This document shows positions 1 through 20,200 of a DNA stretch of 64,000 nt, piece by piece. This stretch comes from Obrimoposthia wandeli (taxonomy: Eukaryota), in assembly GCA_977020255.1 (NCBI GenBank), contig CDROCS010000774.1, forward strand, positions 372,001 to 436,000, written 5' to 3'. Positions within the stretch are counted from its first letter, which is position 1; every line of letters begins with the position of its first letter. A program made the position numbers and the translations under genes. Under the pieces are notes generated by a model. The model worked only from the letters and a program-made list of their open reading frames with translations, had not been told where the DNA came from and did not search any database.

Positions 1-441
1 GGTCGCTGGAACTATACATATCCGTCCTGGACATCCTTTTACACACATGATCATTACAGCTTTACTGTAGGATGTCTTGATTATTTCTAGGGTGTTGTCT
101 AGATTTCTCAAATGTAGATTATATTCGGATAATGTCATCATTTCAGCTTTACTGGTCGGCATGGCTTGTAGTACCAATCCAATTACTACTCCATAAATCA
201 ATCCTTGTGCAACGGTGCACAGGGCCTTGACTGACCTTTTGCAAAGGGTTTTAATTATCAATCGTTTGAGAGATATCTGTTTCTGATTAGATCGTTTTGT
301 TATCTGTCGTTGTTTTGACATCTCCTCGATTCCATTTCTTCCGATAATTAACTGTACCGGTTTACCTTGTATCGTCAACTTTCCGAATCCATTTTTGGCG
401 GACAAGCATGTTTTATGTCCTTCCATCGTTTCAATTATCAC
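1..441 (-). CDS. Open frame not listed in the ORF track (147 codons, no stop, runs off the window edge)
   Basis: Manual translation VIIETMEGHKTCLSAK...ALCTVAQGLIYGVVIGLVLQAMPTSKAEMM...CVKGCPGRICIVPAT has no stop codon. It starts where the 438-1175 ORF ends, with a 1-nt shift. Confidence 0.7.
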   Translation of the reverse strand, partial: MIIETMEGHKTCLSAKNGFGKLTIQGKPVQLIIGRNGIEEMSKQRQITKRSNQKQISLKRLIIKTLCKRSVKALCTVAQGLIYGVVIGLVLQAMPTSKAEMMTLSEYNLHLRNLDNTLEIIKTSYSKAVMIMCVKGCPGRICIVPAT

Positions 442-1175
442 TCTCTTACTTCCATACTCACGTGTTTTGATGACATCGCCATCGAATATATACGTTGGTC
501 CTTTTGTATCAGCATCTTTTGTATTTCCTTTACAACTCGTTTTCTTCGCTTGCATCCAGCGAATGTTGTTGATATTCGGTCAAGTGTGCGCTGTCGGTCA
601 GCTTCGTAATCTATTCGAAATTGATTCAGTATTCTGTTTTGTGGGTAAAATATCGCTTCATTTACTATGTTGTCCTCGATCCTTTCGTCTAGATACACAA
701 GCACTTTGTTCGTTGGTCCATTTGGTCTTTTCATCTTTACAAACTGAAATCTTTTACTGTCGGTTCTCATAGATCGAAGACATTTTCGGATGATCCACAC
801 ATCAATTAGTCCTAACAACACTAATAGCATCATCAGTGCCGGTGTATGGTACTGTGTGGTGTAGTTGTGGATTTCGTTGAACCAGGAACTATTTCCGTGG
901 TTGGAGCCTATCTCCTGTGCTCCCGTTATCGGCAGTAAACAACTTAACAAGCCTATCGCTAGCAATCTTTGGTATTGAAAGCTGGGCACTGTTGTTGTAG
1001 CTTCATTTGTTTCTCGTTGTTGCTTCCTCTTTTCGGTGTATTTTTCTATTTCTCGAACGAGTAACGGTTTGAATTCCGTATTTGGTCTATTCTGTTTTAT
1101 GTAGACCATCGCTTCTTCTGGCGTGTGACCATGGTACTCTACCAACAAGGATACACCTATGGTAGGCGCTAACAT
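438..1175 (-). CDS. Continuation ORF: C-part of pseudophosphatase plus two hydrophobic segments
   Basis: GTMLAPTIGVSLLVEYHGHTPEEAMVYIKQNRPN parallels GISRSATLVLAYLIKTRRMQVLEALKYLQERRS of DSP1. It joins the upstream ORF by a 1-nt shift in an A-run at ~1186. Hydrophobic segments LLAIGLLSCLLPITGA and ALMMLLVLLGLIDVWII. Confidence 0.75.
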   Translation of the reverse strand: MLAPTIGVSLLVEYHGHTPEEAMVYIKQNRPNTEFKPLLVREIEKYTEKRKQQRETNEATTTVPSFQYQRLLAIGLLSCLLPITGAQEIGSNHGNSSWFNEIHNYTTQYHTPALMMLLVLLGLIDVWIIRKCLRSMRTDSKRFQFVKMKRPNGPTNKVLVYLDERIEDNIVNEAIFYPQNRILNQFRIDYEADRQRTLDRISTTFAGCKRRKRVVKEIQKMLIQKDQRIYSMAMSSKHVSMEVRE

Positions 1176-3514
1176 CGTACCTTTTTCTGATATATCAGAA
1201 CGCCGTTTCCTTCTGTGACTTCAGCTTGGATGGTTTGAGTCAATTTCGTCAGATGTTGTTGTGCATCGTTTATTTCTCGATTGGAAGCGTGTATGTATCG
1301 AGTGGTGTCATCTTCAGTATTTTGACACAGACTGATTATTTCGTTTCCGACTTCAACAATGTTGATTACTCGGTTGATACTGTGGAACTTTAATCCAGCA
1401 GTATCTATATCTCCTGGATGACATAAAAATACCTTTGGCATTATCTGTGTAATTTTGTCGACTCCGGCTAAGAATAACCCGGTCAATGATAATGCTTGGA
1501 GGAAATTCTTTTCCTTTGGATCCTCAGGAATGTCGTCCATCCGTCTTTGTTCTTGCAACAGAAGTTGGTAATTTGCCAACTGTCCCAAAAAATTAAGATT
1601 TGGGTTTGCAATACTTCTTCTCTCCTGTAGGTATTTTAGCGCTTCTAGTACCTGCATTCGTCTAGTCTTTATTAGATATGCTAATACTAGAGTTGCTGAT
1701 CGAGAAATTCCTTTCTGGCAATGTACTAACACTTTTCCTTGGTTCCGGAGTTCTCTGTGAAGTATTTCGTTTGTTTCTACGAACCATTCGAGAAGATTAG
1801 CGTCCATTGAGTCTTTTACTCTTAATGTCATAGCTCTGATCGTCTGATATTGTGATTTGTGATTCATTGTAACGTTGATCACGTATGTTATCCCTTGTTC
1901 CAACAGTTTCTTTTCATCTGTTGCATCCTCCACATTTCCGAGGTATAACTTACCTGGAATGATCTCACTCATTGGTGGCATTAATTCTGACTCTTCAAGT
2001 TTTAGTCTTTCTAATCTCTTCTCTATTTGTTCGTCGATGTTGGATAGTTTCGCCAATTTCTTTCCTCTCAGCATTCGTATTGCTGGAGAGATATTCATCT
2101 TTGTCTCTGATGTCTGTTCCTTTGTTGAGTCTTCTTCCGATTCGGTCTCTTCTGCAGATTTAATTCGTCTTTCTTGTATATTCTGTTTCACGAATTCTAT
2201 GTTTTGTCTTTTTCTGCTCTCTTTAGCGAATTCAACCTCCATGGTTCTTCCGAATCGCTCTATTATGTTATCTTCGGATTCTGTTGATTCTGTATCGTTA
2301 CTTTCCGGTTCGCTGTCTTGACTAGACTCGCTCGAAGGGTATTCTGGTATGTCTGTCTGAACTGAAATTAATGAAGGGGTTAGAATAATTGGATTGATTT
2401 CCCCTTCGTATTTGTGAATCGGATACGGTATTACGCTATCTTTAAGTATTTCAACTTGGAATTGTGCTCCATAGCACATGACAATTGTTTCCAATTTACC
2501 CATGATGGACAATCCATCAAAATAGGTAACATTCAGCTTAGATATCGGTGTCTTCGCATAATTAATTAAGTTTACTCGTATCTCGGTTGATGATGGCCAT
2601 CGATTTTTTAGTAAAATTATAATTTCGTCGTTTATCGATGTAATTACACTTGGTGCGGATGATACTATTTCGGCATGATATTTTGGCTGGTTTGAAGTTG
2701 TTACTTGTTCTCGGATCATATTGATTCTTTGTGGTTTTTTATTTTTAGCTTCCCACTTCCGGTATCCGCTGTCAATGCGTAACTCTGCCGTTGCTTTGAT
2801 GATTTTATTGTTAGTCACTTCCGGATGGGTTGGCGAATGAAATCCTTCTATTACGCTCAACCTTACAGATACTTCCGTTTGATCTGTGTCTAACCGGTGA
2901 GATTCTGGTATACAACATACAATTGTCTTTCCATCAAAGTATTTGGTGTCCATCTGACAAATTATCTTTTCAGTGTCAGCGTCGATTAAATGGACTCTCA
3001 TGATATCTCTTTTCCCATGTGAATTACGTAATACCATTATTACATCGTGGTATTCTTGTTTGAGTCTTTTTGGTGTACCATGCAGTATGTGACCACCGGC
3101 CGGTTCTTTTTCTTCCTGACTGGCTAGTCCTGCTTCAGTACTGACATAGTTCTGCCATGCAACTATGTTTGGTGTCAATGTGATTTCGATTATCACTTTC
3201 TCAGTCGTAAACACATTGGAATTTTGATAAAGTGCTGCGACTAATGTATTTCCGTCGTAGTATGACACTCTAAGTTCGCACAGAAATTCGTTTGTCAGTG
3301 CATCTTTCACAATGACTTTTTTCGCCACATCTGTTGGTTGTGTTTTTTCGAAAACAACTATTATCTCTTCGTCTTCTTCTAATATCTCTTGTGGTGCGAT
3401 GTGTCGGATTACTTCCTTTTCCTCTTGGTACTTCATTCTGAGCATACCAATTCTCGCTGGTTTTTCCTCGCTACCACTCGTCATCATGTTTATGTAGTTC
3501 CGATCACTTACCAT
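1169..3514 (-). CDS. Post-integrase cargo ORF: 3 IPT/TIG-like repeats, dual-specificity phosphatase, N-part of a second phosphatase-like domain
   Basis: DSP motifs IIPGKLYLGN, GITYVINVT, general-acid D (VKDS), VLVHCQKGISRSATLVLAYL (1697-1723) and NPNLNFLGQL. Three repeats carry P..I....II and Y(Y/F)DG.T/S motifs. The frame is open upstream to ~3598. Confidence 0.85.
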   Translation of the reverse strand: MVSDRNYINMMTSGSEEKPARIGMLRMKYQEEKEVIRHIAPQEILEEDEEIIVVFEKTQPTDVAKKVIVKDALTNEFLCELRVSYYDGNTLVAALYQNSNVFTTEKVIIEITLTPNIVAWQNYVSTEAGLASQEEKEPAGGHILHGTPKRLKQEYHDVIMVLRNSHGKRDIMRVHLIDADTEKIICQMDTKYFDGKTIVCCIPESHRLDTDQTEVSVRLSVIEGFHSPTHPEVTNNKIIKATAELRIDSGYRKWEAKNKKPQRINMIREQVTTSNQPKYHAEIVSSAPSVITSINDEIIILLKNRWPSSTEIRVNLINYAKTPISKLNVTYFDGLSIMGKLETIVMCYGAQFQVEILKDSVIPYPIHKYEGEINPIILTPSLISVQTDIPEYPSSESSQDSEPESNDTESTESEDNIIERFGRTMEVEFAKESRKRQNIEFVKQNIQERRIKSAEETESEEDSTKEQTSETKMNISPAIRMLRGKKLAKLSNIDEQIEKRLERLKLEESELMPPMSEIIPGKLYLGNVEDATDEKKLLEQGITYVINVTMNHKSQYQTIRAMTLRVKDSMDANLLEWFVETNEILHRELRNQGKVLVHCQKGISRSATLVLAYLIKTRRMQVLEALKYLQERRSIANPNLNFLGQLANYQLLLQEQRRMDDIPEDPKEKNFLQALSLTGLFLAGVDKITQIMPKVFLCHPGDIDTAGLKFHSINRVINIVEVGNEIISLCQNTEDDTTRYIHASNREINDAQQHLTKLTQTIQAEVTEGNGVLIYQKKVRC

Positions 3515-3599
3515 TCGTGTAAGTTTAATGGTATTGGTATTCGATTTCGATTTCTGTGATCTTAACTCATATCGTGACGCATTATCTTTATTTGGTACT

Positions 3600-4670
3600 C
3601 AATTTGCATCGATTTGCATGTACAATCATCGGCTCCTTGTTCCGATTCTCCTCGTTGATTACTTTCAAATTTGTTGAGGTTGTCTGATCACCTTGTATGG
3701 TCCTTTGTATGGTCTGTGAAGTTTAAACGATAGACCTGGTTCGATGACTGGATAAAATATCATCACTTGATCTCCGACTCTAAATTCATGTGGTTTTGCT
3801 TTTTGTCGTATTGTTCCTTGTAACCTTCTTGATTGAATTTCAACTTCAATCCGGCTTTGGTCCAAGCATCTTGTAACCTTTCCTTCATGACGACAATGTA
3901 TTGTTCAGTTTCTAGGTACTGAGATGTTGGCTCGGTCCATTCCAGATCCATTGGCATATTGTTCTGTCTGAGATACATCAGATAGAATGGTGTGTGACCC
4001 GTCGCCTCTCGAACTGAATTCCTGTAAGCATATAAACATGAAGGTAATATTTATCCCAATCCTCTTGCTTGTCTGAGCAATAGATTGTACCATCATACAT
4101 AAAGTTTTATTAAACCTTTCCACCAGACCATCTGTCTGTGGGTGATATGGTGAAGTTTGTAACTTCATGATTCCGAATATCTTCGATACTGCTTTTATGA
4201 CTTCTCCAGTGAAGTTCTTACCTTGATCCGTTAACAATTTTCTAGGCACTCCGTATCGAAATATTATCTCTTCTACTAAGATTTGTGCTATTGTTTCAGC
4301 CTTCTGGTTCTGCATGGGATATGCTTCTACCCATCTCGTCATGTAATCCGTAAATACTATGACATACTTGTTTCCTTTACTTGATTCTCTCAATGGTCCC
4401 AATATATCCATCGCTGTGAATTCCATTGGTGCCAAGGGAACTGGCATTGGTTTCAACGGAACTTTAGTACGAGTTCCGGTGTCTTTTCTGGTTAAACATA
4501 CTTTACATTGTTTACACCATTGTTTTATGTCGTCTTCCATACCATCCCAATGGTACTTCTCTTTGATTCTGGCTATTGTCTTTCGCCCTGACAGATGTCC
4601 TCCTAGTGTTCCGTCGTGATACTGGATCATCACTGCTGTTTTCAATGACTTCGGAATTACTACTACTATC
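3600..4670 (-). other. Integrase (HHCC + DDE core + C-terminal GPY region; C-terminal part split by frameshifts)
   Basis: YHDGTLGGHLS..CKQCKVC; AMDILGPL, LTDQGKNF, YHPQTDGLVERFNKTL. Across frameshifts the sequence reads DWDKY-LPSCLYAYRNSVREATGHTPFYLMY, FRVGDQV, YKGPYKV and IVHANRCK. Confidence 0.93.
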
Positions 4671-7600
4671 TTTCCGACATTATTGACAATATACAAGATT
4701 CCTTCTTTTATCGAGTATTTTTTCGTCATTTCATCGTTTAGATCTCCTTTCACCAACAATTCTTTGATTAGACTCAGTTCTTCATCTTCTTTCTGTTCTT
4801 TGATGATCTCTTTGTCTATTTTACCCGTCTTTAGCAAAATCGTCAGTAGATTTGCTTCTCCTTTTTGGTCATTGGTTTCATCTTCTTCTGGAATTATGTT
4901 TCCTTTCTCGTCTACATTTGTCAATCTCGACAAACAATCTGCGTTGCCGTTCGACTTTCCGGTTCTATAACGGATTTCTAGATCGAATTCGGCCAATTTT
5001 AGAAACCATCTGTTTAATCTACTCATCTCATCTCTATGTTTATATAAGAACTGTAGTGGTTTGTGATCTGTATACAGGAATACTTTTTGTCCTAGCAAAT
5101 AGTGTCTGTACTGTCTACATGAATACACTATGGCTAGACATTCCTTTTCGATAACAGAGTATCCTCTTTCGGCTCTGTTTAATCCTCTACTCGCATACGC
5201 GATGACGTGTTCTCTTCCTTCGTCATCCTCTTGTCCCAATACTGCTCCTACAGCATAGTTACTTGCATCTGTCATGAGTATGAACTGTCGGTTTATATCT
5301 GGGAACGCTAATATTGGTGCTTTTATCAATCTTTCTTTTAAATGCTCGAACGCTTGTTGGGCTTCTTTTCCCCATATGAACTTCTCATCTTTTCTCGTCA
5401 ACTTTCTCAATGGTGTTGCTATATCTGAAAAATGTTCAACAAATCGTCTATAATAATTCGCAAGACCTAAAAAACTCTGTATCTCCTTAACAGTCTTTGG
5501 CGCTAAATGCGCTTTTACTTTCTCGATCTTTGCCGGATCAGGTCGAATGCCTTCTTTCGATACTATATGTCCTAAAAATGTTACTCGCTCTTTAGCCCAT
5601 TCGCATTTTGTAGGTTTAACTTTTAATTTAGCGTTTTCCAGTCTTTTAAATACAACTTCAAGATTTTTTAAATGTTCTTCGAACGTTTTCGAAAATATTA
5701 TTATGTCATCAATATAAACCATCGTGTTTGCACACGATGCGAGTACAAAATTCATGCAACGCTGAAATGTTGCTGGAGCTCCTGTCAGTCCGAATGGCAT
5801 CTTTTCGCATTCGTATAATCCATCTCCGCAGGAAAAGGCTGTTTTGTGTTTATCCTCTTCCTCTATCTCGATTTGCCAGTATCCACTCTGCAAATCCAAT
5901 GTCGTAAAATAATCTGAATTACCCAATTTATCGAGCATCTCTTCGATTCTAGGTAATGGATACACATCTTTTCTTGTGATCTTGTTCAGTTCTCTGAAAT
6001 CTATACAGAATCTCATTTTCCCATCCTTCTTTTTTACCAACACCACAGGTGCTGAGAATGGCGAAAAACTCGGTCTAATTACTCCTGTTTTAGACATATC
6101 TTCAATCTGACTTTTTACTTCATCTTGTAATTGTAATGGTACTCGATATGGTCTTCTTCTGACTACTTTGTCTTCTGTCAGTGGTATTGTATGTTTTATG
6201 ACAGGTGTTTCTCCTATGTCATATGGATTTTTTGCAATTACTTTCGGAAATTTATGTATTAGATCAAGTAATTGTTTCTTTTCTCTAGTTGTCAGTCTTT
6301 CTGATTGGATTACTATTTCTTCGTAATCGTTCGTATCTTTATCGAGTTTCATAGCACACACGGTGGGATTCTCCATCTGTGCTATCTTTCCCAACCTCAT
6401 TCCTCTGTATAATAGAATGTCATTGTTGGTTGTATTCATCAGTCTAACTGGTATTTTGTGGTTTTCGATCAGGCATACTGTACTCACAACTGGTAATTCG
6501 TATTTCTCTATGAAATCTCGTGATGGTTCGAACACAACTGGTCCTTTATCTTCTGATAATGTGTGACCTTGAATAAGAAATTGCGATCTTTTACCGATTT
6601 TTATAGGAATCTCTATAATTACATCAATTTGGTTTATTTGTCTGTTTGATGTGCTATCCTTCAATCTTGGATCTTGTAAATCAATACTTATCCCTTTAAG
6701 TTGTGATAGTACATCCATTCCTAAAATTGTAGGTTCAGGACATTCTTTCATGATTCTAACTGGTATAGTGATCGTATTACGTCCAATTATAAATGTACAT
6801 GGTAATATTCCCGTCACTTTTACAGGGTCTCCATTGACCGATACCAAGAATTCATCTGGTTCTGCCATTGTTCGTTTCTGTTCCTCTGTCAAACAGTCTT
6901 CACTTACTATCGAAGCTACAGCACCTGTATCAATTAAGGCTTTTACTCTTAAATTATTTACTCTAATGATAGCTGCTGGTCGCTGTGCTCCATTTATGTT
7001 TCCCATATGGTATATTGTATTTATCGAATTATTACACTCTGTCAGTCCACTTCCTATGTTTGGATAGTGAAATCTAATGTTTCTCACTTGTCGATCTATT
7101 ATTCTTCGACAAATCGGACATGATACCATTTCATTCGCACATCTCCGACATGTTCTGACATGTCCGCATGGTAGAAAGGCAACTTCTATTTTGTTGACCA
7201 TGCAAACTGCGCATTCCGGATCTTCTAGTACGTATTCTAATTCATTTATGTACTCTTTCTCTTTTGTTTCGATTGTACTGTCATCTTTATCTCGCAGTAA
7301 TTCAAAAATCGATCCGTATCCGTTTCGCGTAGTTTTTATTTTTAATTCTACCAATTCTCTAATTCTTTCTGCTTCTTTTGGATATAACCTTCTCACGAAT
7401 GACACTACCGGTGTGTCTTGTTGAGCCAAAATCTCTTTTCGTGTGATTTGGTATTCGATTATACATTCGGTTTTCTGTTCTTTTTGCTTTATTTTATTAC
7501 AAAATTCGCAAAATTCATGATGTAAAATTTTCTTAGGTAGCTCAAGAGTATATCTGTCGATAATTCGTTCTTTTTTACACTTGTGGCATTTAATTACGTC

Positions 7601-10600: not shown

Positions 10601-13600
10601 GATTGAACATTCTTTCACTTCTACTTGTACTTTATCAACATCCTGATACACAAAGTAGTTTTCAACACCTTGAACTTCTAGTTTTGACGGTTGTGATTCT
10701 GGACAGTCTTCGCTGTCAAGCAGTGAATACTTTTGTCCCATCTTTGGTATGCTACAGTCATATGCTATCAATCCTGATGCCTGTTGCATTCCCATAAACA
10801 TTACTAACATCATCATCATCATTGTGGTGGACATATTTGGTTGATTGTTTCTCTCTTTCGGACGGTATTGTTTATTTTCCTTTTGACGATTCTCATGACA
10901 TTGTTCGTCATCGTCTTCATTCATTTCCAAAATGGTTTTAGCGTAGTCACTTAATTTTGCCCAACCTCCGTTTTCGTCAATTCGTCTCTGTAATACATTC
11001 TCTATCAAATACATCGCTTCATTTATTCCTTGTTTGACTTCGTGAGGTTGGCTCGTTCGTTCCGTCAATTGGAAACATAGATATGTGATCGCTGTAATTA
11101 ACTTTTTATTTGTAGTCTGGTTTCCACATAGTCTCGCTAAAACTTCACCGTCATAAAATCTATCTATCGATGCATGGTATACATGATTCGCGGTCATTCT
11201 CTTTACTGCAGACATCTGTGATCTGACTGCTTTAGTCAAATTGTCTGTTATATCGGTTGTTTCATCTCTGTACATTTTAAACAACTTCGGCTTCACTTGC
11301 CTGAGAATTCCCGTAAGTATATCTTTACTACTTGGAGTTTCCGAATTCATATCACCTCTGATATCTTCATTCCTCTCTGCACTATACTGCTCTAATGACG
11401 CTGCTAACTGTCCAATACTTAGATGTCTCTCTTCATCAGTTTGTGGTGCTGTTAGAACATTTCGTAATATACTTTCGCCTTTTCTAGGTCTTCCAGGTCC
11501 TCTTCGAAAATACTGATACTCAGTTTGATCCTCTCCTGGATCATACGTTTCACCATTATACTGTATCTCTTGACTTGGTCCTTCTTCATGGCCAATCTCT
11601 TCACTTTGTCGCATCATTTGCTCTGCTTGTCTATCTTTGTATGCGGCATGCCAAATTGGTGAATCCAAATCTACAATCTCGGAGACTTCGTCTTCTCCTA
11701 CTAGTTGGGTTACGGTTTCGTTTTGTCTCACTTGGTTAGCTGTATCCGTGACTTCATCTTGTCTGATTGGAATTATATCTGGTTCTGGTGGCACCTCGAC
11801 CACTGGAGTTGTCAACTCATTTTCTAAATTCATGTCTTGTAATTCAGCTACGTACGGTTCTGGTGTGGATGTCTTGTTCCAAGCTTCAGCTACATCATTA
11901 TCTCCGCTTTCGCTTGAACTGTCTAAAATTTCTATAGGCGTTTTTATCATTTCTAACGCAGAATTCAATATCTCGGATAATCCTTCATTATCTACTAACT
12001 CTTGACGTCCTACAGTGATGACATCAATTTTTTCCTCTAATTCATTTCCTATCGGATATCCACACTCGACTGGTACGTCCTCATCATCTAGTGATCTCCC
12101 TTTATAATGGAACAACATATTCATTCCATCAATTTCAAGTTTCTCGGCCAACTTTTTCCGAATCGTTTTCATTGTTTGATACACGTTAAGTTTTTCATGT
12201 ATTATCTGTCCGGAAATTAATCGAAGTGAAATTTTCATCGTTCCTTTTTGGTTTGATCTCTGTACATAACGACCATAACCTTTCAGTAGTCCTCGGGGTA
12301 CTTCTTTGTAACCCAAGTTATCATGACTATGTTTAACCAATTCTGCACGCACTTCTTCCAATCGGTGCACTTTAATTGTTTGCAATTTGGCCAAAACTTC
12401 TGGAGCTTCACTCGTTTCATCTAACGGTTGATTCAACGTCTCCTTAGCTTCACTAATTATCTTTTTTACATCTTCCATACTCGTAGCATTTCTCGCTGCT
12501 TCCACATGATCAGTCATAGGTTGTGCGTTACACGTTTTCTCTATTGGTGTCTCATACGCTTCTAGTATTCTATTCATTAAATCATTCATCTCTTCTCTCG
12601 AGTGTAGACTTTTCTCTTGTTTCGACAACGTAGATGAATTCGCCATCTTTGTATGTGGTGAATCTTTAATTATTCCCAACATTCGTTCAAATTTACTATC
12701 ACTATCTTCAAAATCTATTTCGCGTCGAAGCTCGGTCTCGCGATTCCTATCACTGTCATCGCTTACATAACTAAAATTTCCTTTCGGTTTCGGCGAACTC
12801 TCTCGACTATTTGTCTTGTCGACATTATTATTATTATATCTACCAGAATTATTATATCTCTCAGCTCCTTGCTGTCCTACGTAATTATTGTATCTCTCAG
12901 CTCCTTGCTGTCTGTCTGCATAGTTATTGTATCTACCTGGTGACTGTTGTCTATCTGTATACTGATTATTCAGTCTCCATGGCTGTGGAGTATATCCACC
13001 ACCTCTATTCCATGGCGGAGGTGAATTATATCCTCTATAATTATTTCCAAAATTATTATTACCGAAATTATTATTTCCAAATCTGTTAGCTCCGAACTCT
13101 TTACTTCTCGTACAATCTCTCGAATAGTGACCCATTTGTTTACACGTGTAACACATTATTCTCCCTCGAATATCTATCTTATTTTGTTCATCTTCGAACT
13201 GTACTCGACGACTATTCTGTCTATTATCATAGCGTCCTCTAAAATCATTTCTTCGGAAATTCGATTCAAAACCGCTTCCTCGATTATTGAATCTTCCGTC
13301 ACTATTTCCTGCATTATTTCCAAATCGAGAGTCACTTCGCTCTCCTCTGTTGGCGTTATAATTCCTATCGTCTCCTCTCCAAGGTTGGCGATTTCCGGAA
13401 TTATCTCTATTAAATCTATTCCTGGAATCATCTCTATTTCTATTCCACGAATCATTATTATTTCTACCTCTTGAATCATCTCGATTCCTGTTCCAAGACT
13501 CACTATTATTTCTACCTCTTGAATCATCTCGATTCCTACTTCGGAAATTATCTCTATTTCCGTTACTGGATTCATCTACTTTTTCAAACTTATTTTGTCC

Positions 13601-14434
13601 ATAATTTCGATTCTGAAAATTACTCGGTTCTGTTTTATTCACGAAGACCTTTGTCTTATCGTCGTCACCTGCAGTCATTGCGTAGATTGCCAATGCTGCA
13701 TTATTTTTTATATTTTTCTCAATCTCTCTCGCCTTTCGTACGGCGTTATCAAAATCATTTGTATCCGATACTGCTAATAACACTTTAATATCCTTTTTCA
13801 ATCCTCCTCTAAATATATCTAACAAGACCTCTGCCATTTCATTTTGGTTCCGGTCATTTTCCGCTGCTTGTGCTTCTGGAGCTACAGGATTACCGTCCTG
13901 ATTTCTCATTATTCTTCTTGGGTACGCTCTTGCGGCCAAGGTTCTCAAAACATACGCGTATTCATTCACGCCTTCATCATGTTTCTGTTTCCGTTCTCTC
14001 ATGAGTCGCTTATTTACTTTGGCTAAGTCTCCTAATACCAATTTTCCAATAAAAGCATTTTCCAACGTTGGCCAGTCTAAACGTTCTGCTTCTGTCAAAT
14101 GTTTATACACTTCAAGTGCTAATCCGGTTAAATGTGCCTGTACTCTGACACATTTTTCTCTATCGTTCCATCCTTGAACATCTGCACAACTCGAATATTC
14201 TGCGAGGAAGTCACAAATACTTTCCTCATCTCCTTTAAACTTTGTAATCTGCAATGATCCTGAAAAATTGGGTCTCAACGTCGCATTTAAAGCTTGTGCC
14301 AACTGCTCGGCATTCATTTCACCTACATTATTTCCTGCATTAATATCTGGTGGAGCTCCTTGGTGAGCCATATCGTCAATTATATCGTCTTCAATTATTC
14401 CTTCAATATTATTTACTTGAACTTCTTCAATCAC
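3905..14434 (-). CDS. Gag-cargo-Env-Pol polyprotein (3509 aa in ORF track; first ATG at 14371; true C-terminus continues past frameshifts at ~4069/4046)
   Basis: Uninterrupted 10.5 kb ORF with recognisable Gag, Ubl, Bcl-2-like, glycoprotein, two proteases, BIR/RING, RT, RNase H and integrase motifs. Confidence 0.95.
   Translation of the reverse strand: [3509 protein letters not shown]
4920..5290 (-). other. RNase H (Ty3/Gypsy type)
   Basis: [50 protein letters not shown]. Confidence 0.95.
5560..6245 (-). other. Reverse transcriptase (Ty3/Gypsy type)
   Basis: [69 protein letters not shown] (YIDD at 5705-5716), FLGHIVS. Confidence 0.97.
6700..6985 (-). other. Retropepsin aspartic protease 2 (canonical Pol position)
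   Basis: [15 protein letters not shown] (DTG at 6923-6931) and ILGMDVL motif. Confidence 0.9.
7100..8075 (-). other. Inhibitor-of-apoptosis module: BIR1, degenerate BIR2, C3HC4 RING
   Basis: BIR1 (7860-8075): MARSGL..VRCVWC....[21 protein letters not shown]. BIR2 (7500-7690): LAKKGLF....DVIKCHKC...HHEFCEF. RING (7100-7215): [36 protein letters not shown], typical of IAP RINGs. Confidence 0.9.
8330..8615 (-). other. Retropepsin aspartic protease 1
   Basis: [22 protein letters not shown] (DTG at 8558-8566) and C-terminal VMIGMDVI motif. Confidence 0.85.
8980..10834 (-). other. Chuvirus-type envelope glycoprotein (signal peptide, Cys-rich ectodomain, C-terminal TM)
   Basis: Signal [21 protein letters not shown] followed by [15 protein letters not shown], C......[21 protein letters not shown], CQL.....[21 protein letters not shown]..R....C..EL.[9 protein letters not shown] and TM [22 protein letters not shown]. 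This motif series is the one I recognise from Jingchuvirales glycoproteins and their retroelement captures. Confidence 0.85.
10935..11325 (-). other. Bcl-2-like domain (BH3-, BH1- and BH2-like segments)
   Basis: [24 protein letters not shown] is in register with Bcl-2 [35 protein letters not shown] resembles [25 protein letters not shown] resembles LHTWIQDNGGWDAF (BH2), with BH1-BH2 spacing within about 2 residues of Bcl-2. Confidence 0.65.
11477..11506 (-). other. AT-hook motif
   Basis: [10 protein letters not shown] matches the (K/R)-G-R-P-R-K AT-hook core. Confidence 0.65.
12010..12238 (-). other. Ubiquitin-like domain within the polyprotein
   Basis: [52 protein letters not shown] aligns gap-free by eye to ubiquitin residues 1-52 (M.I......G..I........T......K...K..I..........G..L.D). 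There is no C-terminal di-Gly. Confidence 0.75.
13110..14371 (-). other. Gag region with retrotransposon-gag core and CCHC zinc knuckle
   Basis: [32 protein letters not shown] and [19 protein letters not shown] (gag core / major-homology-like region). [14 protein letters not shown] = CX2CX4HX4C at ~13113-13157. Confidence 0.9.
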
Positions 14435-14807
14435 TTCTGGATTGGCAACTTCAATCCCCTCTGGGTTTTGAACTTCAATATTATCAATTTCTTCTGGGTT
14501 TATGTCACCAATTAACTCAGTCAGATCAAAACTATCGGTTGAAACTGCTGATTGATTTACGTCTCTTTCTGATACGTTTTCTTCGACTCTAGTCTTTTCT
14601 GTTACTTTGTTATCTGTTTGGGGAACCTGTTCAATTCGGTTAACTTTATTATTATTTGTCTCTTCCTTGGGAATCTGGCTTTGTCTTCTAGTATTAAACG
14701 CGGGTCCTTTTCTATTATCCGTTGTCTTATCAATTATGTATTCGTTTACGATATCAATTTACTTATTATTTTTATCTTATTTCACAATTCTTATTTTACG
14801 ATTTTTT

Positions 14808-15010
14808 ATCTCTTTAATTAGTTCGAGGACAGAGTCTCCCGACTTAACCTATTCAATTAATTACTTCGAGTATCAATCCACTCGATTCTCACTTTATCAA
14901 ATTTATTTACGATTTTATCTTTTTAATTAGTTCGAGGACAGAGTCTCCCGACTTAACTTATTCAATTAATTACTTCGAGTATCAATCCACTCGATTCTCA
15001 CTTATAAAAT
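14808..15010. repeat. Two tandem copies of a ~109 bp unit in the element leader
   Basis: gttcgaggacagagtctcccgacttaac at 14821 and again at 14930. Confidence 0.9.
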
Positions 15011-15016
15011 TTACTG

Positions 15017-15360
15017 ACTCGAGGAACAAATCCACTCGACTTCTCAAAACTTATCAAATTCTTAACTTCGAGGAACAAATCTACCCGATTTCTCAAAAAC
15101 TTATCAAATTCTTAACTTCGAGGAACAAATCTACCCGATTTCTCAAAAACTTATCAAATTCTTAACTTCGAGGAACAAATCTACCCGATTTCTCAAAAAC
15201 TTATCAAATTCTTAACTTCGAGGAACAAATCTACCCGATTTCTCAAAAACTTATCAAATTCTTAACTTCGAGGAACAAATCTACTCGATTTCTCAACACT
15301 TATCAAATTCTTAACTTCGAGGAACAAATCTACTCGATTTCTCAAAAACTTATCAAATTC
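15017..15360. repeat. 50-bp tandem array (6 full copies plus 1 degenerate) in the leader
   Basis: cttaacttcgaggaacaaatctacccgatttctcaaaaacttatcaaatt recurs at 15061, 15111, 15161, 15211, 15261, 15311. Confidence 0.95.
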
Positions 15361-15645
15361 TTCTGAAACTTATTCTCAATTGTCTATATTCTTCTGCTGA
15401 AACTTATTCTCAATTTATCTGAACTTATTCTCAATTTATCTGAAACTTATTCTCAATATCTGAAACTTATTCTTAATATCTGAAACTTATTCTTAATATC
15501 TGTAACTTATTCTTAATATCTGTAACTTATTCTTAATATCTGTACTTATTCTATTTACCTGAAACTTATTCTCAATTATCTGAAACTTATCCGAACTTAT
15601 TCTATTTACCTGAAACTTATTCTCAATTATCTGGAACTTATCTAC
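15361..15645. repeat. Degenerate ~20-bp tandem array (ctgaaacttattctcaat...) in the leader
   Basis: More than ten diverged copies of tctga(a/t)acttattct(c/t)aat are visible. Confidence 0.85.
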
Positions 15646-15670
15646 GTGAATTCGCTGTGTCCGACGAGCT

Positions 15671-15689
15671 ATCCTCACTCGGGGCACCA
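15671..15689 (-). promoter_or_regulatory. Primer-binding site complementary to the 3' end of elongator tRNA-Met
   Basis: Plus strand ATCCTCACTCGGGGCACCA vs metazoan elongator tRNA-Met 3' end AUCCUCACACGGGGCACCA (18/19, recalled sequence). It lies 8 nt inside the LTR end. Confidence 0.8.
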
Positions 15690-16178
15690 CTTTAATATGT
15701 TGGGGTTTCTATACGAAACTTTGTATAGATCCTCTTAATGTGCGGAGGGCCCCAACGTGAGTTCGATTAGAAGCAGGTCTTAAAGTTGGTCGTGGCCTAC
15801 TTAGTGTTATGGTTGCCTAATCTCTTGTACTATCTGAAGGTATTTGATTAGATGCCTCTTAGTCTGAAGGGTGCAAAACAACTTGTTCTAATGTAGGAAA
15901 TTGTTTATTTGAAATTCACGTAACTAACACAACAATACGTTTATGTACGTATTTCTAAAAAGTATGATAAAATTCCTAAAGGACTTCTGTAAGTCTCTAC
16001 AAGAAGTGGGGATGAACCACGTATCGATTTTACGTTCAGGTGATTAAGCTTTTAGGTTTATTCTTCTTACTTAGGTTGGTTAATCTATAACGCAACTCTC
16101 TTAAATTTCTTTGCTCCTACTTCTTATCTCTAGATAAAGTTTCTTGGTTCTTTAACTCTATCTGCTGTGTGTTTGACC

Positions 16179-16585
16179 CCGAATTGTCCACTGTGAACAA
16201 TGGGTCTCCTAAAAACCTAATTGTCGAGATGACAATGAAAAACTTACTCCTAATTGTCAACTATGGACAATGAACGAGCCGAATTGTCAGCTAGGGACAA
16301 TGAGTCTTACCGAATTGTCAACTAGGGACAATGAGTATTTATCCGAATTGTCAACTAGGGACAATGAATCTTACGGGCAAAAAGTCTGGGTATGATTCCT
16401 AATTGTCGCTGGGGACAATGAATAAATGGCTGATCTTAATTACCAACTAGGGGCAATGATTTAGTTAAAGAGTCGGAAATCCTAATTGCCAGCTAGGGGC
16501 AATGAATATGTTTAAAATATGTTAAACAACCTAATTGCCAACAAGGGGCAATGAATTTATCCTAATTGCCAACTAGGGGCAATGA
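16179..16585. repeat. 11 interspersed ~25-bp palindromic units within the LTR
   Basis: CC(G/T)AATTG(T/C)C-N5-7-G(A/G)CAATGA cores separated by variable spacers. Confidence 0.9.
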
Positions 16586-16653
16586 ATGGTTTAGTTGGTG
16601 TTCTTACCTATATGTTACTCGAGATTCCGGTACAGGATCCGTATGTAGCTTGG

Positions 16654-17240
16654 GAGAATGGCTTATTTTCTCCTGATCGCAAATATAGATTGAGAATGGC
16701 TTATTTTCTCCTGATCGCAAATATAGATTGAGAATGGCTTATTTTCTCCTGATCGCAAATATAGATTGAGAATGGCTTATTTTCTCCTGATCGCAAATAC
16801 AAATTGAGAATGGCTTATTTTCTCCTGATCGCAAATACAAATTGAGAATGGCTTATTTTCTCCTGATCGCAAATATAGATTGAGAATGGCTTATTTTCTC
16901 CTGGTCGCAAATACAAATTGAGAATGGCTTATTTTCTCCTGGTCGCAAATATAGATTGAGAATGGCTTATTTTCTCCTGATCGCAAATACAAATTGAGAA
17001 TGGCTTATTTTCTCCTGATCGCAAATACAAATTGAGAATGGCTTATTTTCTCCTGATCGCAAATATAGATTGAGAATGGCTTATTTTCTCCTGATCGCAA
17101 ATACAAATTGAGAATGGCTTATTTTCTCCTGATCGCAAATACAAATTGAGAATGGCTTATTTTCTCCTGATCGCAAATATAGATTGAGAATGGCTTATTT
17201 TCTCCTGATCGCAAATATAGATTGAGAATGGCTTATTTTC
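16654..17240. repeat. 38-bp tandem array, 15 full copies plus a partial copy, within the LTR
   Basis: gagaatggcttattttctcctgatcgcaaatatagatt from 16654 to 17224, i.e. (17224-16654)/38 = 15. Variant copies carry tacaaatt or ctggtc. Confidence 0.97.
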
Positions 17241-20200
17241 TTTGGTTGATATTGAAAATCTAAATTATCGATTAAGTTGGCTGCATTCACCAATCTCTAC
17301 TTACCAATTCTCCGATTCCTGGGATATTGTGCTGTTCTGTTTAGTTTCTCCGTTTTCTTTGTAGGAGATATCAGTGACTTATATAGTTGCCTATTTGCTG
17401 TCAATCAGCACTCTTGACTTCTCTTCTCGGTCCGGGCTTGGCGGCAGCTGAAACTGCTAATGCTAGAAATCCACGTGAGTCCGGGCAGCTGCTAAATTGA
17501 ATTAATTAAATTGCACGTAAATGTGCTTACTTTTGACGTTTGTAGATTTCCTTTCTGCTGACGTTAGCAGATTATTTTTCCCTTTTTTGCTTTTTGCACT
17601 TTTGGGTTAATTAATTTAACTTTTATACATTTCACATTATACACGACCTTCGTGGTCCTCCTAATTTTTACCCTAAATTCCACTAATTTCAATTCTAAAA
17701 CTAAAATTAATATTTTAATTTAATTTTCAACCTTGCTTTCAAGGATTTTTATTTTAGTATTTAATCGACTAAAATATTTAAATTTCTTAATTCTCAAACC
17801 TAACACTAACAACAGTCATATCAAAAAGATTTATCTAAAAATAATTTGCCTTACTACTGAAATAACTACAATGCTAACGCATGTTATTAAAACTTGATTT
17901 AAAAAATTATTTTATATTTAATATTTTAGCTTAAAAAATTTAAACAAAGCAGACAAAATTATATTCAAAATATTTAATGAAGCTACATTGGCTACTTATG
18001 ATCAAAATATTCTCTCACAAAAACCAAGATATTTATATGATATTCTGGAGCCTGGTGATGTGACGATATATATGCATCTTAGGAACAACGTTGACGACTG
18101 TAGTTAAGGAATATTTGAAATTTATCTTCTTAATCTTTTTAAAAATCAACCGATGAATGTAAAAAACTGTTACAATGTTGATAAATTCAAGAAGCAATTA
18201 TTTAGAAAATATTACGAAGTATAATGTAAAACTAGAAGCACTTTTAAGTATTAATTCATAGATTTATTACATATTAGTGCTATATTAAATATATTATTGT
18301 TAATATACCGTTACTATGTACATAAATCTAATTATTCAAATCTATTAAAAACCATTTCTAAACGTTTTGAAAAGGAATGCAGTTTCTGATACGAAATGAT
18401 AACTGATTATATAATCAACCGATACACATTTTAGCATACGAATCTGAATTTATTTGGCTTTTACTTAAAGTAAACTACGTCTTTCATTCCTAAGAATACT
18501 TCTTCAAGTACTTACTCGTGATAAATGAAATATGATCCTGTTCTAAATACTCGTATCAAGTACTGTTTTCAAACTGTTTTTCGATTAATAGATTATAGCT
18601 CAAAATTTAGCCACTAATAATTAAACAATAAATTAATTCCGATGTAGACAGTACAAGTAAATCATTGAAATATTTAATGGTATAACCTTTATAACTATCA
18701 ATTAATTATTTTCGAGTAGGCCATAATATCCTACTAAATATTACAACATATATTCTTTCTATCATGTTCATTTTTGTGATGCAATTAAGCTAAAATTTGC
18801 AGCAATCTTATTTTGAAGATAATATGGGTGTGCAATTATGAAGGCAGAAGTTGTGTCAGGAAATAAAAGAATAACTTAATTGATTACATCATTGATAAAT
18901 ATCAATTTGCGAAGGTGTAAGTAATATCAAATTGTATTAATCGAATTAATATTGTCCAAATTGTTCTAGATAATTTGAAAAATTATAATTTGATAATTCT
19001 AACAGATCGCTAGATAATTTGAAAGCTTATTTTTTTAAATTGGCCTAAATAAGCTGTGGTCAATATAAAAATTTGCGTAAATAGTTCCAGGTAAAAAGTC
19101 ACAAAATTCGATTTCTGACGAGTAAATCTTGAGTAAAGTTTTGGTCCCACTAATTGACTTAACATACCCCTGCGTCATGAACTTTGGTTCAAACCTTTAC
19201 AGCAAGGGTTAAAGTGCAAGATACTTGACCTTTGACCCTTGCTGATAAGGGTTTGACTCTCAACTCATAGCTCATGACTTATGGGGTCCCGTTGAGCTAT
19301 TGAGCGAGAACAGACACTTTACACTACTTCCGACCATTACTGAATTCGATCATTTTTAATTGATATGATGTATGTTTGCTCAAATTTATTCAAATGAAGT
19401 TGTCATCAAACATATTCTCGTGTTTGAGGGTTCAAAATGTTGTAGTTGTCTAAGAAATTTACTTTCTTCCACTATGCATCAAAAAAATTACAAATATTAA
19501 AAGAAGTAAAAGTTATGTGTATTAGTTTCGTCTAAACATAACCGTAAAAATATTTTTTGCAACGGTTCTGCTCTATTATTTCACCAAGCAACTAACTACA
19601 AAATATCATTATTTTCAAATTCATACACTACATTTTAATTCACACCAACTGAAATCACAAAATTACAATCAAAACCATTTTCACAATAAGCATTACACAC
19701 GCGTGGAAATTAACAAAGCACTTAAAAGTGCTCAAATTTGCCTTATCAGAAATTAATTATGAACATAATGCTATCAGCAAAACAAATATTTGTCATGTAA
19801 ATAAATACACAGAATAACTAAACACAGAGCAACACCATACTTCAGTATTTCTTGATAGTTTTTAAACTATCATTATGTAACAACGTTTTGTAAGCTTGCT
19901 GATAAAAAATAAAACGTCGAATTAAAATTTTATGGCAAAGAAATGACAAACGTTAAATAGTCAAAAGTTTCAAATAACTTAAAAATCAAATACGTTATTG
20001 TCTACAAAATAAAGAGAATTGAAATTCGAAGTAAAAGTAGAATTCTCAAATTCCCATTAAACAAGCTAGTGATAATTCTGATAAATTTCATTCTGATAAA
20101 TATTTTAATATTTTAGTTCGTCATTTTATTATTCTGATTGCTTACTTCTGTTCGAGTTTTTGATTTATTGTTGTAGCTGTTTTGATAGAGAAGAGAAAAT

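What the first reader, a model, noticed from the sequence alone, without database searches (positions are those of the whole stretch)
1..17805. Giant enveloped Gypsy element whose single polyprotein carries an anti-apoptosis and signalling toolkit
Seen in sequence: one frame holds Gag-ZnK, Ubl, AT-hook, a Bcl-2-like domain, a fusion glycoprotein, PR1, BIR-BIR-RING, PR2, RT, RH and IN. It then continues through small frameshifts into 3 IPT-like repeats, a DSP, a pseudo-DSP and membrane modules. Established: Bcl-2, IAP and VH1-type phosphatases are counter-defence genes of large DNA viruses and are rare in LTR retroelements. Inference: this behaves like an infectious endogenous retrovirus-like agent that blocks both mitochondrial and caspase-level cell death. 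Caveat from memory: the giant planarian Burro Gypsy elements were described with a single >5000-aa polyprotein containing anti-apoptotic domains. This may be a relative, with the envelope and dual-protease architecture as the possibly new part.
Basis: partly seen in the sequence, partly recalled or inferred. Interest (0 to 1): 0.92.

Follow-up and report, generated by a model that had tools for sequence, protein, structure and literature searches.

The report
Burro-type giant enveloped Gypsy retroelement
This is the 5' 17.8 kb of a giant retrovirus-like Gypsy element of the already published planarian "Burro" type, whose huge gag-env-pol protein also carries cell-death-blocking domains; only its phosphatase gene looks undescribed.

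Summary
On the minus strand, about 3,500 codons are open from 14434 (chance about 1e-121). They encode Gag with one zinc knuckle, a ubiquitin-like domain, an AT-hook, a Bcl-2-like domain and a mononegavirus-type fusion glycoprotein (Pfam 1e-93). Protease 1, BIR-BIR-RING, protease 2, RT, RNase H and integrase follow. A downstream gene has three beta-rich repeats and an intact dual-specificity phosphatase.

Three claims fail or stay weak. The IPT fold is not supported. The pseudo-phosphatase is weakly supported. The phosphatase gene may be a separate accessory ORF, not part of the polyprotein.

Gag-Ubl-BCL2-env-PR-pol in one frame, with BIR, was published for Burro/GYPSM1 of Schmidtea (Arkhipova & Yushenova 2019, PMC6431247). 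GAG-ENV-POL flatworm elements are in Chary & Hayashi 2026 (PMC13524379). Eight metagenomic relatives share the backbone, with one to three proteases and exchangeable cargo: ankyrin sits where BIR-RING sits here. None carries BIR-RING or the phosphatase gene.

This copy is defective: two frameshifts in the integrase tail and at least two in the cargo gene. The 3' LTR lies outside the window. Verdict: a new member of a known kind, of moderate interest.

The parts
15698..17805 (-). Candidate 5' LTR (about 2.1 kb). TG...CA ends form an imperfect inverted repeat. It holds a TATA-like box at 17378-17385, a 38-bp x 15.5 tandem array at 16654-17241, a 31-bp array at 16252-16374 and an AATAAA at 15904-15909.
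   Evidence: Sequence read; tandem arrays. The last ~100 bp are conserved in the sister fragment at 27930-28165. The outer boundary is unproven because the 3' LTR lies outside the window.
15672..15689 (-). Primer-binding-site-like block. It starts with TGG, 8 nt after the LTR's terminal CA.
   Evidence: It lies in a ~65-nt block that is nearly identical between this element and the sister fragment, while the flanks are about 75% identical. The tRNA was not identified; the window holds no tRNA gene.
14435..15671 (-). Untranslated leader full of tandem arrays (20-bp x ~12, 50-bp x 6.9, 109-bp x 2).
3668..14434 (-). gag-env-pol gene. About 3,500 codons are uninterrupted from the 5' end (first ATG at codon 22). 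It is broken only in the integrase C-terminal region, by two frameshifts that compensate each other.
   Evidence: Relatives read the integrase tail in one frame.
13085..14371 (-). Gag: capsid-like region plus one CCHC zinc knuckle (13109-13153).
   Evidence: zf-CCHC 4e-06. A 6-sequence Gag profile hits only Ty3/Gypsy-derived capsids in the PDB: dArc2 0.03, dArc1 0.11, PNMA2 1.1. About 25% identity to the Gag of relatives.
12005..12244 (-). Ubiquitin-like domain.
11471..11509 (-). AT-hook (GRP core flanked by basic residues).
   Evidence: Conserved in position in P0001, P0003 and P0004.
10910..11332 (-). Bcl-2-like helical domain with a conserved BH2-like G-G-W motif.
   Evidence: Moderate confidence.
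8879..10834 (-). Env. An internal signal-peptide-like segment is followed by a ~540-aa ectodomain with 14 Cys, a hydrophobic anchor and a tail. There is no furin-like site.
   Evidence: PF24664 at 1e-93. All 14 Cys are invariant in a 9-sequence alignment at 35-40% identity. Hydropathy; motif scan.
8345..8608 (-). Aspartic protease 1 (D-T-G).
7859..8029 (-). BIR1 (canonical zinc ligands).
7490..7666 (-). BIR2 (divergent; zinc ligands kept with a two-residue longer spacer).
   Evidence: NAIP aligns over both BIRs.
7091..7222 (-). IAP-type C3HC4 RING.
   Evidence: Best PDB match is cIAP1 BIR3-RING at 3e-15. Pattern confirmed.
6692..6985 (-). Aspartic protease 2 (D-T-G).
5561..6037 (-). Reverse transcriptase (YIDD).
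4985..5374 (-). RNase H.
4139..4657 (-). Integrase zinc-binding and catalytic core domains.
1..3514 (-). Downstream cargo gene, running off the left edge of the window. It is broken by at least two frameshifts. It lies in the same frame as pol, separated by 23 codons that hold 4 stops.
2378..3397 (-). Three tandem beta-rich repeats of ~90 aa, fold unknown.
1565..1948 (-). Dual-specificity phosphatase domain with an intact P-loop.
1035..1516 (-). Possible second, catalytically dead phosphatase-like domain (broken once).
   Evidence: (E 0.01) and reading. No Pfam hit.
157..965 (-). Region with three hydrophobic, membrane-span-like segments (909-965, 774-848, 157-231).

Best explanation
WHAT IT IS
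The region is the 5' part (LTR, primer-binding site, repeat-rich leader, gag-env-pol, first accessory gene) of a Burro-type giant Ty3/Gypsy endogenous retrovirus. It lies on the minus strand of a very AT-rich, planarian-like genome.

SHOWN
- The domain order is Gag(CCHC), Ubl, AT-hook, Bcl-2-like, signal peptide + fusion glycoprotein + membrane anchor, protease 1, BIR-BIR-RING, protease 2, RT, RNase H, integrase, all in one frame. A phosphatase gene follows.
- The backbone is shared with at least eight relatives.
- The env cysteine scaffold is invariant across those relatives.

INFERRED MECHANISM
1. The LTR drives one genomic RNA.
2. The giant polyprotein is threaded into the ER at the internal signal sequence, so Gag-Ubl-Bcl2 stays cytosolic. 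The glycoprotein ectodomain is lumenal, and the anchor returns the chain to the cytosol for PR-IAP-PR-pol.
3. Signal peptidase and the element's own proteases then cut the modules apart.
4. Protease domains flank exchangeable cargo slots. The slot between protease 1 and protease 2 holds an IAP-like module here and ankyrin repeats in relatives. The region after integrase holds further cargo.
5. The released Bcl-2-like and IAP-like proteins and the membrane-tethered phosphatase would keep the producing cell alive and damp stress (MAP-kinase) signalling while Gag particles acquire the glycoprotein.

STATE OF THIS COPY
The long open frame suggests a young insertion. The copy is defective all the same: two compensating frameshifts in the integrase tail and at least two frameshifts in the cargo gene.
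For: - Open frame and Pfam domains.
- Chance of such an open frame about 1e-121.
- Ubl profile hits ubiquitin, NEDD8 and ISG15.
- Bcl-2 fold hits in the PDB and in viral structure models.
- Gag profile hits only Ty3-derived capsids (dArc, PNMA2).
- IAP- and DUSP-type PDB matches.
- Relatives P0001-P0006, P0009 and L006 share the order Gag-Ubl-env-PR-(slot)-PR-RT-RH-IN, at about 49-57% identity in pol and 35-40% in env.
- Ankyrin occupies the PR1-PR2 slot in P0003 and L006.
- Internal signal-like segment and anchor flank env.
- GC and AT skew are uniform from 1 to 14,000 and differ from the flanks.
- The PBS block is conserved in a sister fragment.
- Published Burro description gives the same modules in the same order, with in-frame env, tandem repeats and a host genome over 70% A/T: PMC6431247 and PMC11410931.
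- BURRO1 is transcribed and repressed by PIWI: PMC8532177.
Against: - No Burro sequence could be fetched, so relatedness to Burro1-4 rests on architecture and literature. No alignment or tree supports it.
- The organism is not identified.
- MATH/TRAF, ankyrin and dUTPase-like motifs reported for Burro are absent here, and there is one zinc knuckle where Burro has two or three.
- The 3' LTR and target-site duplication are outside the window.
- The Bcl-2 call rests on a low-confidence model.
- The env fold class was not determined.
- Processing sites, topology and every cargo function are inferred.
- None of the relatives carries the IAP module or the phosphatase gene.
Confidence: 0.8

Rival explanations
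1. Chimera. The element ends soon after integrase, and the repeat-phosphatase gene belongs to the host or to another insertion that merely abuts it.
For: - No relative has anything like it.
- No homologue of its repeat region was found anywhere.
- 23 codons holding 4 stops separate it from pol.
- The 3' LTR is unseen.
Against: - It is on the same strand, in the same frame and only about 70 bp from the end of pol.
- GC (0.39-0.40) and the strong AT skew (-0.26 to -0.32) match the rest of the element. The flanks are different, with GC 0.27-0.30 and skew near 0.
- No repeat or LTR boundary lies between the two genes.
- Relatives regularly carry accessory ORFs at exactly this position.
- It has no introns over at least 2.4 kb.
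Confidence: 0.12
2. A separate GAG-ENV-POL Gypsy lineage that resembles Burro by convergence or by shared ancient ancestry only. It might come from a non-dugesiid flatworm or another invertebrate.
For: - The closest retrievable relatives are only 49-57% identical in pol, and they come from unnamed metagenome assemblies.
- Several Burro motifs are missing.
- GAG-ENV-POL elements are polyphyletic according to PMC13524379.
Against: - The specific chain Gag-Ubl-Bcl2-env-PR, all in one frame, plus BIR, giant size, tandem arrays and a ~70% A/T host, matches the Burro description point by point.
Confidence: 0.15
3. The cargo serves the element's own assembly and trafficking and does not block cell death. 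Ubl and the RING ligase would drive ubiquitin-dependent sorting or budding of Gag. BIR would act as a protein-binding module, and the phosphatase would act on viral or trafficking proteins.
For: - Gag has no PTAP or PPxY late-domain motif, so another route to the budding machinery would be needed.
- Ubl is the most conserved extra domain in the family, whereas the IAP and phosphatase modules are lineage-specific.
- From general knowledge, some BIR proteins have non-apoptotic roles.
Against: - A Bcl-2-like domain occurs together with a BIR-BIR-RING block whose closest matches are cIAP1, XIAP and NAIP. Large DNA viruses use this same pairing against apoptosis.
Confidence: 0.25

Closest known systems
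Burro1-4 / GYPSM1 giant Gypsy elements of Schmidtea mediterranea, and the Burro-like element of Girardia (Dugesia) tigrina (Jurka 2007; Grohme et al. 2018; Arkhipova & Yushenova 2019, PMC6431247)
   Same: - Giant LTR element in a genome over 70% A/T.
- Gag with CCHC, then a Ubl/SUMO-like domain, then a BCL2-like domain.
- An env related to mononegavirus fusion glycoproteins, in frame between gag and pol.
- PR-RT-RH-IN, a BIR motif, tandem repeat arrays and accessory ORFs.
   Different: - No MATH/TRAF, ankyrin, midasin-like or dUTPase-like motif was detected here.
- One zinc knuckle, where Burro has two or three.
- BIR-BIR-RING lies between two proteases.
- A repeat-phosphatase gene lies downstream, and the accessible texts do not mention one.
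- Sequence identity could not be measured because no Burro sequence was on hand and Grohme 2018 is not held.
GAG-ENV-POL Ty3/gypsy 'errantiviruses' of Platyhelminthes, Nematoda and Bryozoa (Chary & Hayashi 2026, PMC13524379)
   Same: Gene order gag-env-pol; Ty3/Gypsy pol; flatworm hosts; env inherited together with pol.
   Different: - Those env genes are described as herpesvirus gB-type (class III). The fold of this env was not determined here. The absence of a furin-like site fits an uncleaved class III protein, while the 2019 review reported HHpred similarity to gypsy/F-type Env.
- That survey does not describe giant polyproteins or cargo domains.
Unnamed metagenomic polyproteins P0001-P0006, P0009, P0011 and locus L006 (ENA and JGI assemblies)
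   Same: - Same backbone, with 49-57% identity in pol and 35-40% in env.
- All 14 env cysteines are shared.
- Ubl and AT-hook are at the same positions.
- One to three protease domains.
   Different: - Their cargo is ankyrin repeats or unknown sequence.
- All of them that extend past pol carry a conserved RNase_T-like accessory ORF, which is not seen in the window.
- None has BIR-RING or the phosphatase gene.
Mosquito BEL/Pao 'Anakin' elements with a chuvirus-like glycoprotein (Dezordi et al. 2020, as cited in PMC13524379)
   Same: A retroelement that captured a glycoprotein of the Monjiviricetes type.
   Different: A different retroelement superfamily; env is a separate ORF after pol; no cargo domains.
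Anti-apoptotic and signalling genes of large DNA viruses: baculovirus IAPs, herpesvirus and iridovirus v-Bcl-2, poxvirus VH1-type phosphatases
   Same: Works alike on paper. A BIR+RING protein, a Bcl-2-fold protein and a dual-specificity phosphatase are encoded by a virus-like agent. The top viral fold hits are v-Bcl-2 proteins.
   Different: - Here they are modules of a retroelement polyprotein or an accessory gene.
- The phosphatase is closest to cellular MKP-type DUSPs, DUSP10 above all, with no specific likeness to VH1.
- No function was tested.

Membership tests
Ty3/Gypsy (Metaviridae) LTR retroelement | pol domain order PR-RT-RNase H-IN, with Gypsy-type RT_RNaseH and Integrase_H2C2 domains | tested here: met
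   The nearest non-family hits are plant and arachnid Gypsy polyproteins.
Ty3/Gypsy (Metaviridae) LTR retroelement | Gag with a Ty3-type capsid and a CCHC knuckle | tested here: met
   zf-CCHC 4e-06. The Gag profile hits only dArc1, dArc2 and PNMA2, at E 0.03-1.1, which is weak but specific.
Ty3/Gypsy (Metaviridae) LTR retroelement | Two LTRs with TG...CA ends, a target-site duplication and a PBS next to the 5' LTR | tested here: inconclusive
   There is a candidate 5' LTR at 15698-17805 with TG...CA ends and a conserved PBS-like block. The 3' LTR and duplication lie outside the window, and no second LTR copy is in the window.
Burro-type giant Gypsy elements of planarians | env in frame between gag and pol, related to mononegavirus fusion glycoproteins | tested here: met
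   PF24664 at 1e-93 inside the long ORF. The published feature is in PMC6431247.
Burro-type giant Gypsy elements of planarians | Ubl/SUMO-like and BCL2-like domains between Gag and env; BIR motif | tested here: met
   Ubl; Bcl-2 fold at moderate confidence; BIR.
Burro-type giant Gypsy elements of planarians | MATH/TRAF (or midasin-like), ankyrin and dUTPase-like motifs | tested here: not met
   No such Pfam hit in the long ORF or in the PR2-RT linker. The review itself shows these motifs vary between Burro elements, so they may not be defining.
Burro-type giant Gypsy elements of planarians | Total length over 30 kb and an ORF1 of about 4,900-5,100 aa | not testable with these tools
   The element is cut by the window edge; at least 17.8 kb is visible. 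The open frame here is about 3,500 codons, and the pol/cargo junction is ambiguous.
Burro-type giant Gypsy elements of planarians | Sequence clustering with Burro1-4/GYPSM1; dugesiid host | not testable with these tools
   No Burro sequence and no host identification were available. A background GC of 0.27-0.30 fits.
IAP (BIR + RING) proteins | BIR zinc ligands CX2CX16HX6C and a C-terminal C3HC4 RING | tested here: met
   BIR1 is canonical, BIR2 has an 18-residue spacer, and the RING pattern is present. Best PDB match is cIAP1 BIR3-RING at 3e-15.
Bcl-2 family | Eight-helix Bcl-2 fold with BH1/BH2 motifs | tested here: inconclusive
   All top fold hits are Bcl-2 family, but the model has pLDDT 56. 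Sequence profile hits to Bcl-xL over BH1-BH2 are at E about 1. A G-G-W motif is conserved in 2 of 3 sequences.
Dual-specificity phosphatases (DSPc, PF00782) | DSPc domain with the HCxxGxxR(S/T) P-loop | tested here: met
   DSPc 3e-34, DUSP10 1e-23, P-loop present.
IPT/TIG immunoglobulin-like repeats | Recognisable TIG/IPT profile or Ig-like fold | tested here: not met
   No Pfam hit at E <= 1. The PDB profile search gave unrelated hits at E >= 0.2. The AF2 model has low confidence and Foldseek returned noise.
Class III (gB/G/gp64) or class I (F) viral fusion proteins | Characteristic ectodomain fold | not tested
Indirect evidence only: no furin-like site and 14 conserved Cys.

The most novel reading that the evidence does not exclude
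This lineage of Burro-like endogenous retroviruses has added a membrane-tethered phosphatase/pseudo-phosphatase gene with three orphan beta-repeat domains. That would be the first dual-specificity phosphatase reported in a retroelement. More generally, the family would build its giant genomes from protease-flanked cargo slots in which host-manipulation modules (IAP, ankyrin and others) are swapped between lineages, much as large DNA viruses trade counter-defence genes.
Probability: 0.35. Interest if true: 0.6.

Novelty: new member of a known kind. Interest (0 to 1): 0.4.

Why it matters
Burro-type elements make up a large share of planarian genomes. They are transcribed in differentiated tissue and are held down by PIWI proteins (PMC8532177). 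They are the clearest case of a retroelement that has grown a host-manipulation toolkit like that of a large DNA virus.

This window adds two things to that picture. First, a lineage with an IAP-like block between two proteases and an apparently undescribed phosphatase gene. Second, through comparison with metagenomic relatives, a view of cargo slots bounded by protease copies. It does not change the basic picture published in 2018-2019, so its value is comparative, not conceptual.

Tried and rejected
- Exact-protein look-up of the long ORF: not on record.
- Whole-library search with the cargo protein: swamped by about 19,800 phosphatase-domain hits, none covering the repeats.
- Word search restricted to the repeat region: nothing.
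- Scans of JGI metagenome contigs (cargo protein, then env alignment) and of IMG/VR (env alignment): nothing.
- Env alone and as a 9-sequence profile against PDB sequences: nothing, so the fusion class stays open.
- Word search with env returned only two unnamed relatives and no named virus.
- PHROGs on the two last cargo pieces: irrelevant noise.
- dUTPase between protease 2 and RT: not found.
- Structure model of one repeat: too poor to use.
- The M[LI]R motif is enriched at module borders (6 against 1.3 expected). I considered it as a protease cleavage signature and set it aside as unproven, because relatives lack it.
- Late-domain motifs in Gag: none.
- Grohme et al. 2018 and the supplement of PMC13524379 are not held. 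I therefore could not check Burro-2/3/4 domain maps or name the PBS tRNA.
- Host identification from neighbouring ORFs, tRNAs and Rfam failed.

Full report
LOCATION AND REALITY OF THE FEATURE

The feature lies on the minus strand. From 14434 downward one frame stays open for about 3,500 codons. Given the base composition of that strand, 7.6% of random codons would be stops. The chance of such an open frame is therefore about 1e-121. GC (0.36-0.40) and a strong AT skew (-0.24 to -0.32) are uniform from base 1 to about 14,000. The surrounding DNA has GC 0.27-0.30 and skew near zero. The window holds no N runs.

ANATOMY UPSTREAM OF THE ORF

- A plausible 5' LTR runs from 17805 (TG) to 15698 (CA). 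Its ends form an imperfect inverted repeat. It contains a TATA-like box, two tandem arrays and an AATAAA.
- Eight bases further on, a TGG-initiated block looks like a primer-binding site. It sits in a ~65-nt stretch that is almost identical to the sister fragment at 27930-28165, whereas the flanks are about 75% identical.
- A 1.2-kb leader full of tandem arrays precedes the ORF.
- The outer LTR boundary and the proposed 5-bp duplication cannot be verified. The 3' LTR lies beyond the left edge, and no second copy of this LTR is in the window.

DOMAINS OF THE LONG ORF

Pfam gives, in order:
- one CCHC knuckle;
- a near full-length match to PF24664 Monjiviricetes_fusion (1e-93);
- an aspartic protease;
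- BIR;
- an IAP-type RING;
- a second aspartic protease;
- RT, RNase H, and the integrase zinc and core domains.

Pattern checks show D-T-G in both proteases. BIR1 has the canonical ligand set. A second, divergent BIR keeps all four ligands with a longer spacer. The RING is C3HC4. PDB sequence matches are cIAP1 BIR3-RING (3e-15), XIAP and NAIP.

- Gag: a profile of six family members hits only Ty3-derived capsids, dArc2, dArc1 and PNMA2.
- Ubiquitin-like domain: below threshold on its own. A six-sequence family profile hits ubiquitin, NEDD8 and ISG15 at about 1e-06 per domain.
- AT-hook: present, and it recurs at the same place in three relatives.
- Bcl-2-like domain: the weakest call. There is no Pfam or PDB hit alone. 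A three-sequence profile gives 31 Bcl-xL hits out of 32, but at E about 1. The AF2 model has pLDDT 56 and pTM 0.53. Even so, the 50 best PDB fold matches are all Bcl-2 family (TM 0.55-0.64). The best viral matches are herpesvirus, iridovirus, adenovirus and adintovirus Bcl-2 homologues. I take it as probable.
- Env: it begins with an internal signal-peptide-like segment and ends in a hydrophobic anchor. Its ectodomain has 14 cysteines, all invariant in nine sequences that are only 35-40% identical. It has no furin-like site and one N-glycosylation sequon.

THE REGION DOWNSTREAM OF POL

- A gene in the same frame as pol follows about 70 bp after the end of the integrase-homologous sequence. The 23 codons between them hold four stops. 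So it is either a separate accessory ORF, with an ATG at 3514, or is joined to pol only through further frame changes. I cannot tell which.
- It encodes three tandem repeats of about 90 residues. They are significantly similar to each other (z 6.4-12.8; none of 1000 shuffles reaches the score).
- Their fold is unknown. There is no Pfam hit. The PDB profile search gave only unrelated hits at E >= 0.2. The AF2 model is all-beta with pLDDT 49 and gave only noise in Foldseek. 'IPT-like' is therefore not supported.
- Next comes a dual-specificity phosphatase domain (DSPc 3e-34). Its best PDB matches are DUSP10 and other MAP-kinase phosphatases at about 1e-23, and its P-loop is intact.
- After it lies a possible second phosphatase-like domain. 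The only evidence is a pairwise match at E 0.01, in register with the P-loop, with Ser and Leu at the Cys and Arg positions.
- Three hydrophobic segments follow.
- The gene runs off the window.

INTEGRITY (COUNTS ONLY)

- gag-env-pol has no stop or frameshift in its first ~3,500 codons.
- It has two frameshifts in the integrase C-terminal region, which relatives read in a single frame. The two compensate each other.
- The cargo gene has at least two frameshifts, one of them inside the second phosphatase-like domain.
- No nested insertion was seen.
- Whether these breaks are mutations or long-read assembly errors cannot be decided here.

RELATIVES

- A search of the 5.8-billion-protein collection returned polyproteins of 1,934-4,057 aa from ENA and JGI metagenome assemblies. 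They carry PF24664 fused to gag and pol, at 46-57% identity in pol.
- Local comparison and Pfam scans show a shared backbone: Gag-Ubl-(Bcl-2-like)-env-PR-[slot]-PR-RT-RH-IN-[PR]-[cargo].
- Between one and three protease domains are present, so the dual protease is a family trait.
- The slot between the first two proteases is nearly empty in P0002 and P0005. It holds ankyrin repeats in P0003 and L006, and BIR-BIR-RING here.
- After integrase, relatives carry a third protease, ankyrin repeats or unknown sequence.
- Every relative whose contig extends past pol has a conserved RNase_T-like accessory ORF.
- None has anything similar to the IAP block or the phosphatase gene. Searches of 1.84 billion cluster representatives and of metagenome contigs found no homologue of the repeat region.

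COMPARISON WITH THE LITERATURE

- Arkhipova & Yushenova 2019 (PMC6431247) describe Burro (Grohme et al. 2018; GYPSM1 of Jurka 2007) in Schmidtea mediterranea, and a Burro-like element in Dugesia tigrina.
- Their description covers a 4,873-5,140-aa ORF1, Gag with two or three CCHC knuckles, MATH/TRAF or midasin-like sequence, a Ubi2/SUMO-like domain, BCL-2, and then an env region. That env region has hits to arthropod and fish mononegavirus fusion glycoproteins. [quoted passage not shown]
- They also list PR, a dUTPase-like motif, RT-RH-IN, BIR, ankyrin repeats, accessory ORFs and tandem repeats.
- Chary & Hayashi 2026 (PMC13524379) report GAG-ENV-POL Ty3/gypsy elements in Platyhelminthes, Nematoda and Bryozoa with gB-type env. 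They state that chuvirus-like glycoproteins are gB-like.
- The S. mediterranea genome is over 70% A/T (PMC11410931), like the background of this window.
- I could not find in the searchable literature a dual-specificity phosphatase in an LTR element, nor an explicit account of multiple proteases bounding cargo. I could not read Grohme 2018 and had no Burro sequence. Whether this element is one of Burro-2/3/4 or an unnamed family remains open.

MECHANISM (INFERRED EXCEPT WHERE STATED)

1. One LTR-driven RNA encodes the giant polyprotein.
2. The internal signal sequence and single anchor (shown) predict that Gag-Ubl-AT-hook-Bcl-2 stays cytosolic. The glycoprotein ectodomain would enter the ER lumen, and PR-IAP-PR-pol would return to the cytosol.
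3. Signal peptidase and the element's proteases then release the modules.
4. Conservation of every env cysteine across distant relatives (shown) argues that the glycoprotein is used by the family.
5. The Bcl-2-like, IAP-like and phosphatase modules most plausibly prolong the life of the producing cell and damp stress-kinase signalling, by analogy with large DNA viruses.
6. An alternative is that Ubl, RING and BIR serve assembly and budding. Gag has no classical late-domain motif.
7. This copy cannot be autonomous as it stands, because integrase is broken.

VERDICT

I rate this a new member of a known kind. Its moderate interest rests on the lineage-specific cargo and on the cargo-slot view that the relatives provide.

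DECLARATION OF A SLIP

Those bounds bracket the breaks. Several later tool calls used the same bounds as references. This report gives counts only, and treats each broken gene as one part.

Noticed in passing
window 26774-28165 (-): 5' fragment of a sister element on the same strand. Gag residues ~40-252 are 62-80% identical, the leader is ~75% identical, and the LTR-end/PBS block is almost identical. Nothing downstream of Gag remains.
   Followed up: partly
window 59142-61098 (+); also 31113-31525: Remnant of an unrelated Ty3/Gypsy pol (RT-RH-IN, ~26% identity to the main element). Repeated pieces 28043-28636 ~ 63262-63880 and 31246-32244 ~ 60632-61305 suggest further LTR-element debris.
   Followed up: partly
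window 43888-44424 (-): Rfam eukaryotic SSU rRNA match (136 bits, E 8e-37) in which 537 nt span model positions 1-1831. This is a heavily deleted rRNA-like fragment in an otherwise AT-rich stretch.
   Followed up: no
L002 11946-12911; L003 12169-13473; L004 19559-21613; L005 13230-14729; L007 13798-16390; L008 6240-9331: All relatives that extend past pol share a conserved accessory ORF family (mutual E 1e-9 to 1e-69; Pfam RNase_T, mostly weak), sometimes duplicated. The Burro text I could read does not mention it. The window has nothing like it, though it could lie beyond the left edge.
   Followed up: partly
window 3668-14434 and 1-3514 (-): The tripeptide M-[LI]-R occurs 6 times against 1.3 expected (p about 0.004). 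Most occurrences fall at module borders: after the env anchor, after protease 1, before and between the repeats, and before the phosphatase. Relatives lack it.
   Followed up: partly
L004 1-6000: The metagenome contig carrying relative P0004 also carries bacterial-type genes (MacB, ABC transporter, TetR). This is either a chimeric assembly or something odder.
   Followed up: no
L005 16872-18689: A protein-primed DNA polymerase B ORF (PF03175, Polinton/Maverick-like) lies a few kb from relative P0006.
   Followed up: no
window 13040-13560 (-): The C-terminal half of Gag, around the zinc knuckle, is a low-complexity Asn/Arg/Gly/Asp-rich region built from 15-48-bp tandem repeats.
   Followed up: no
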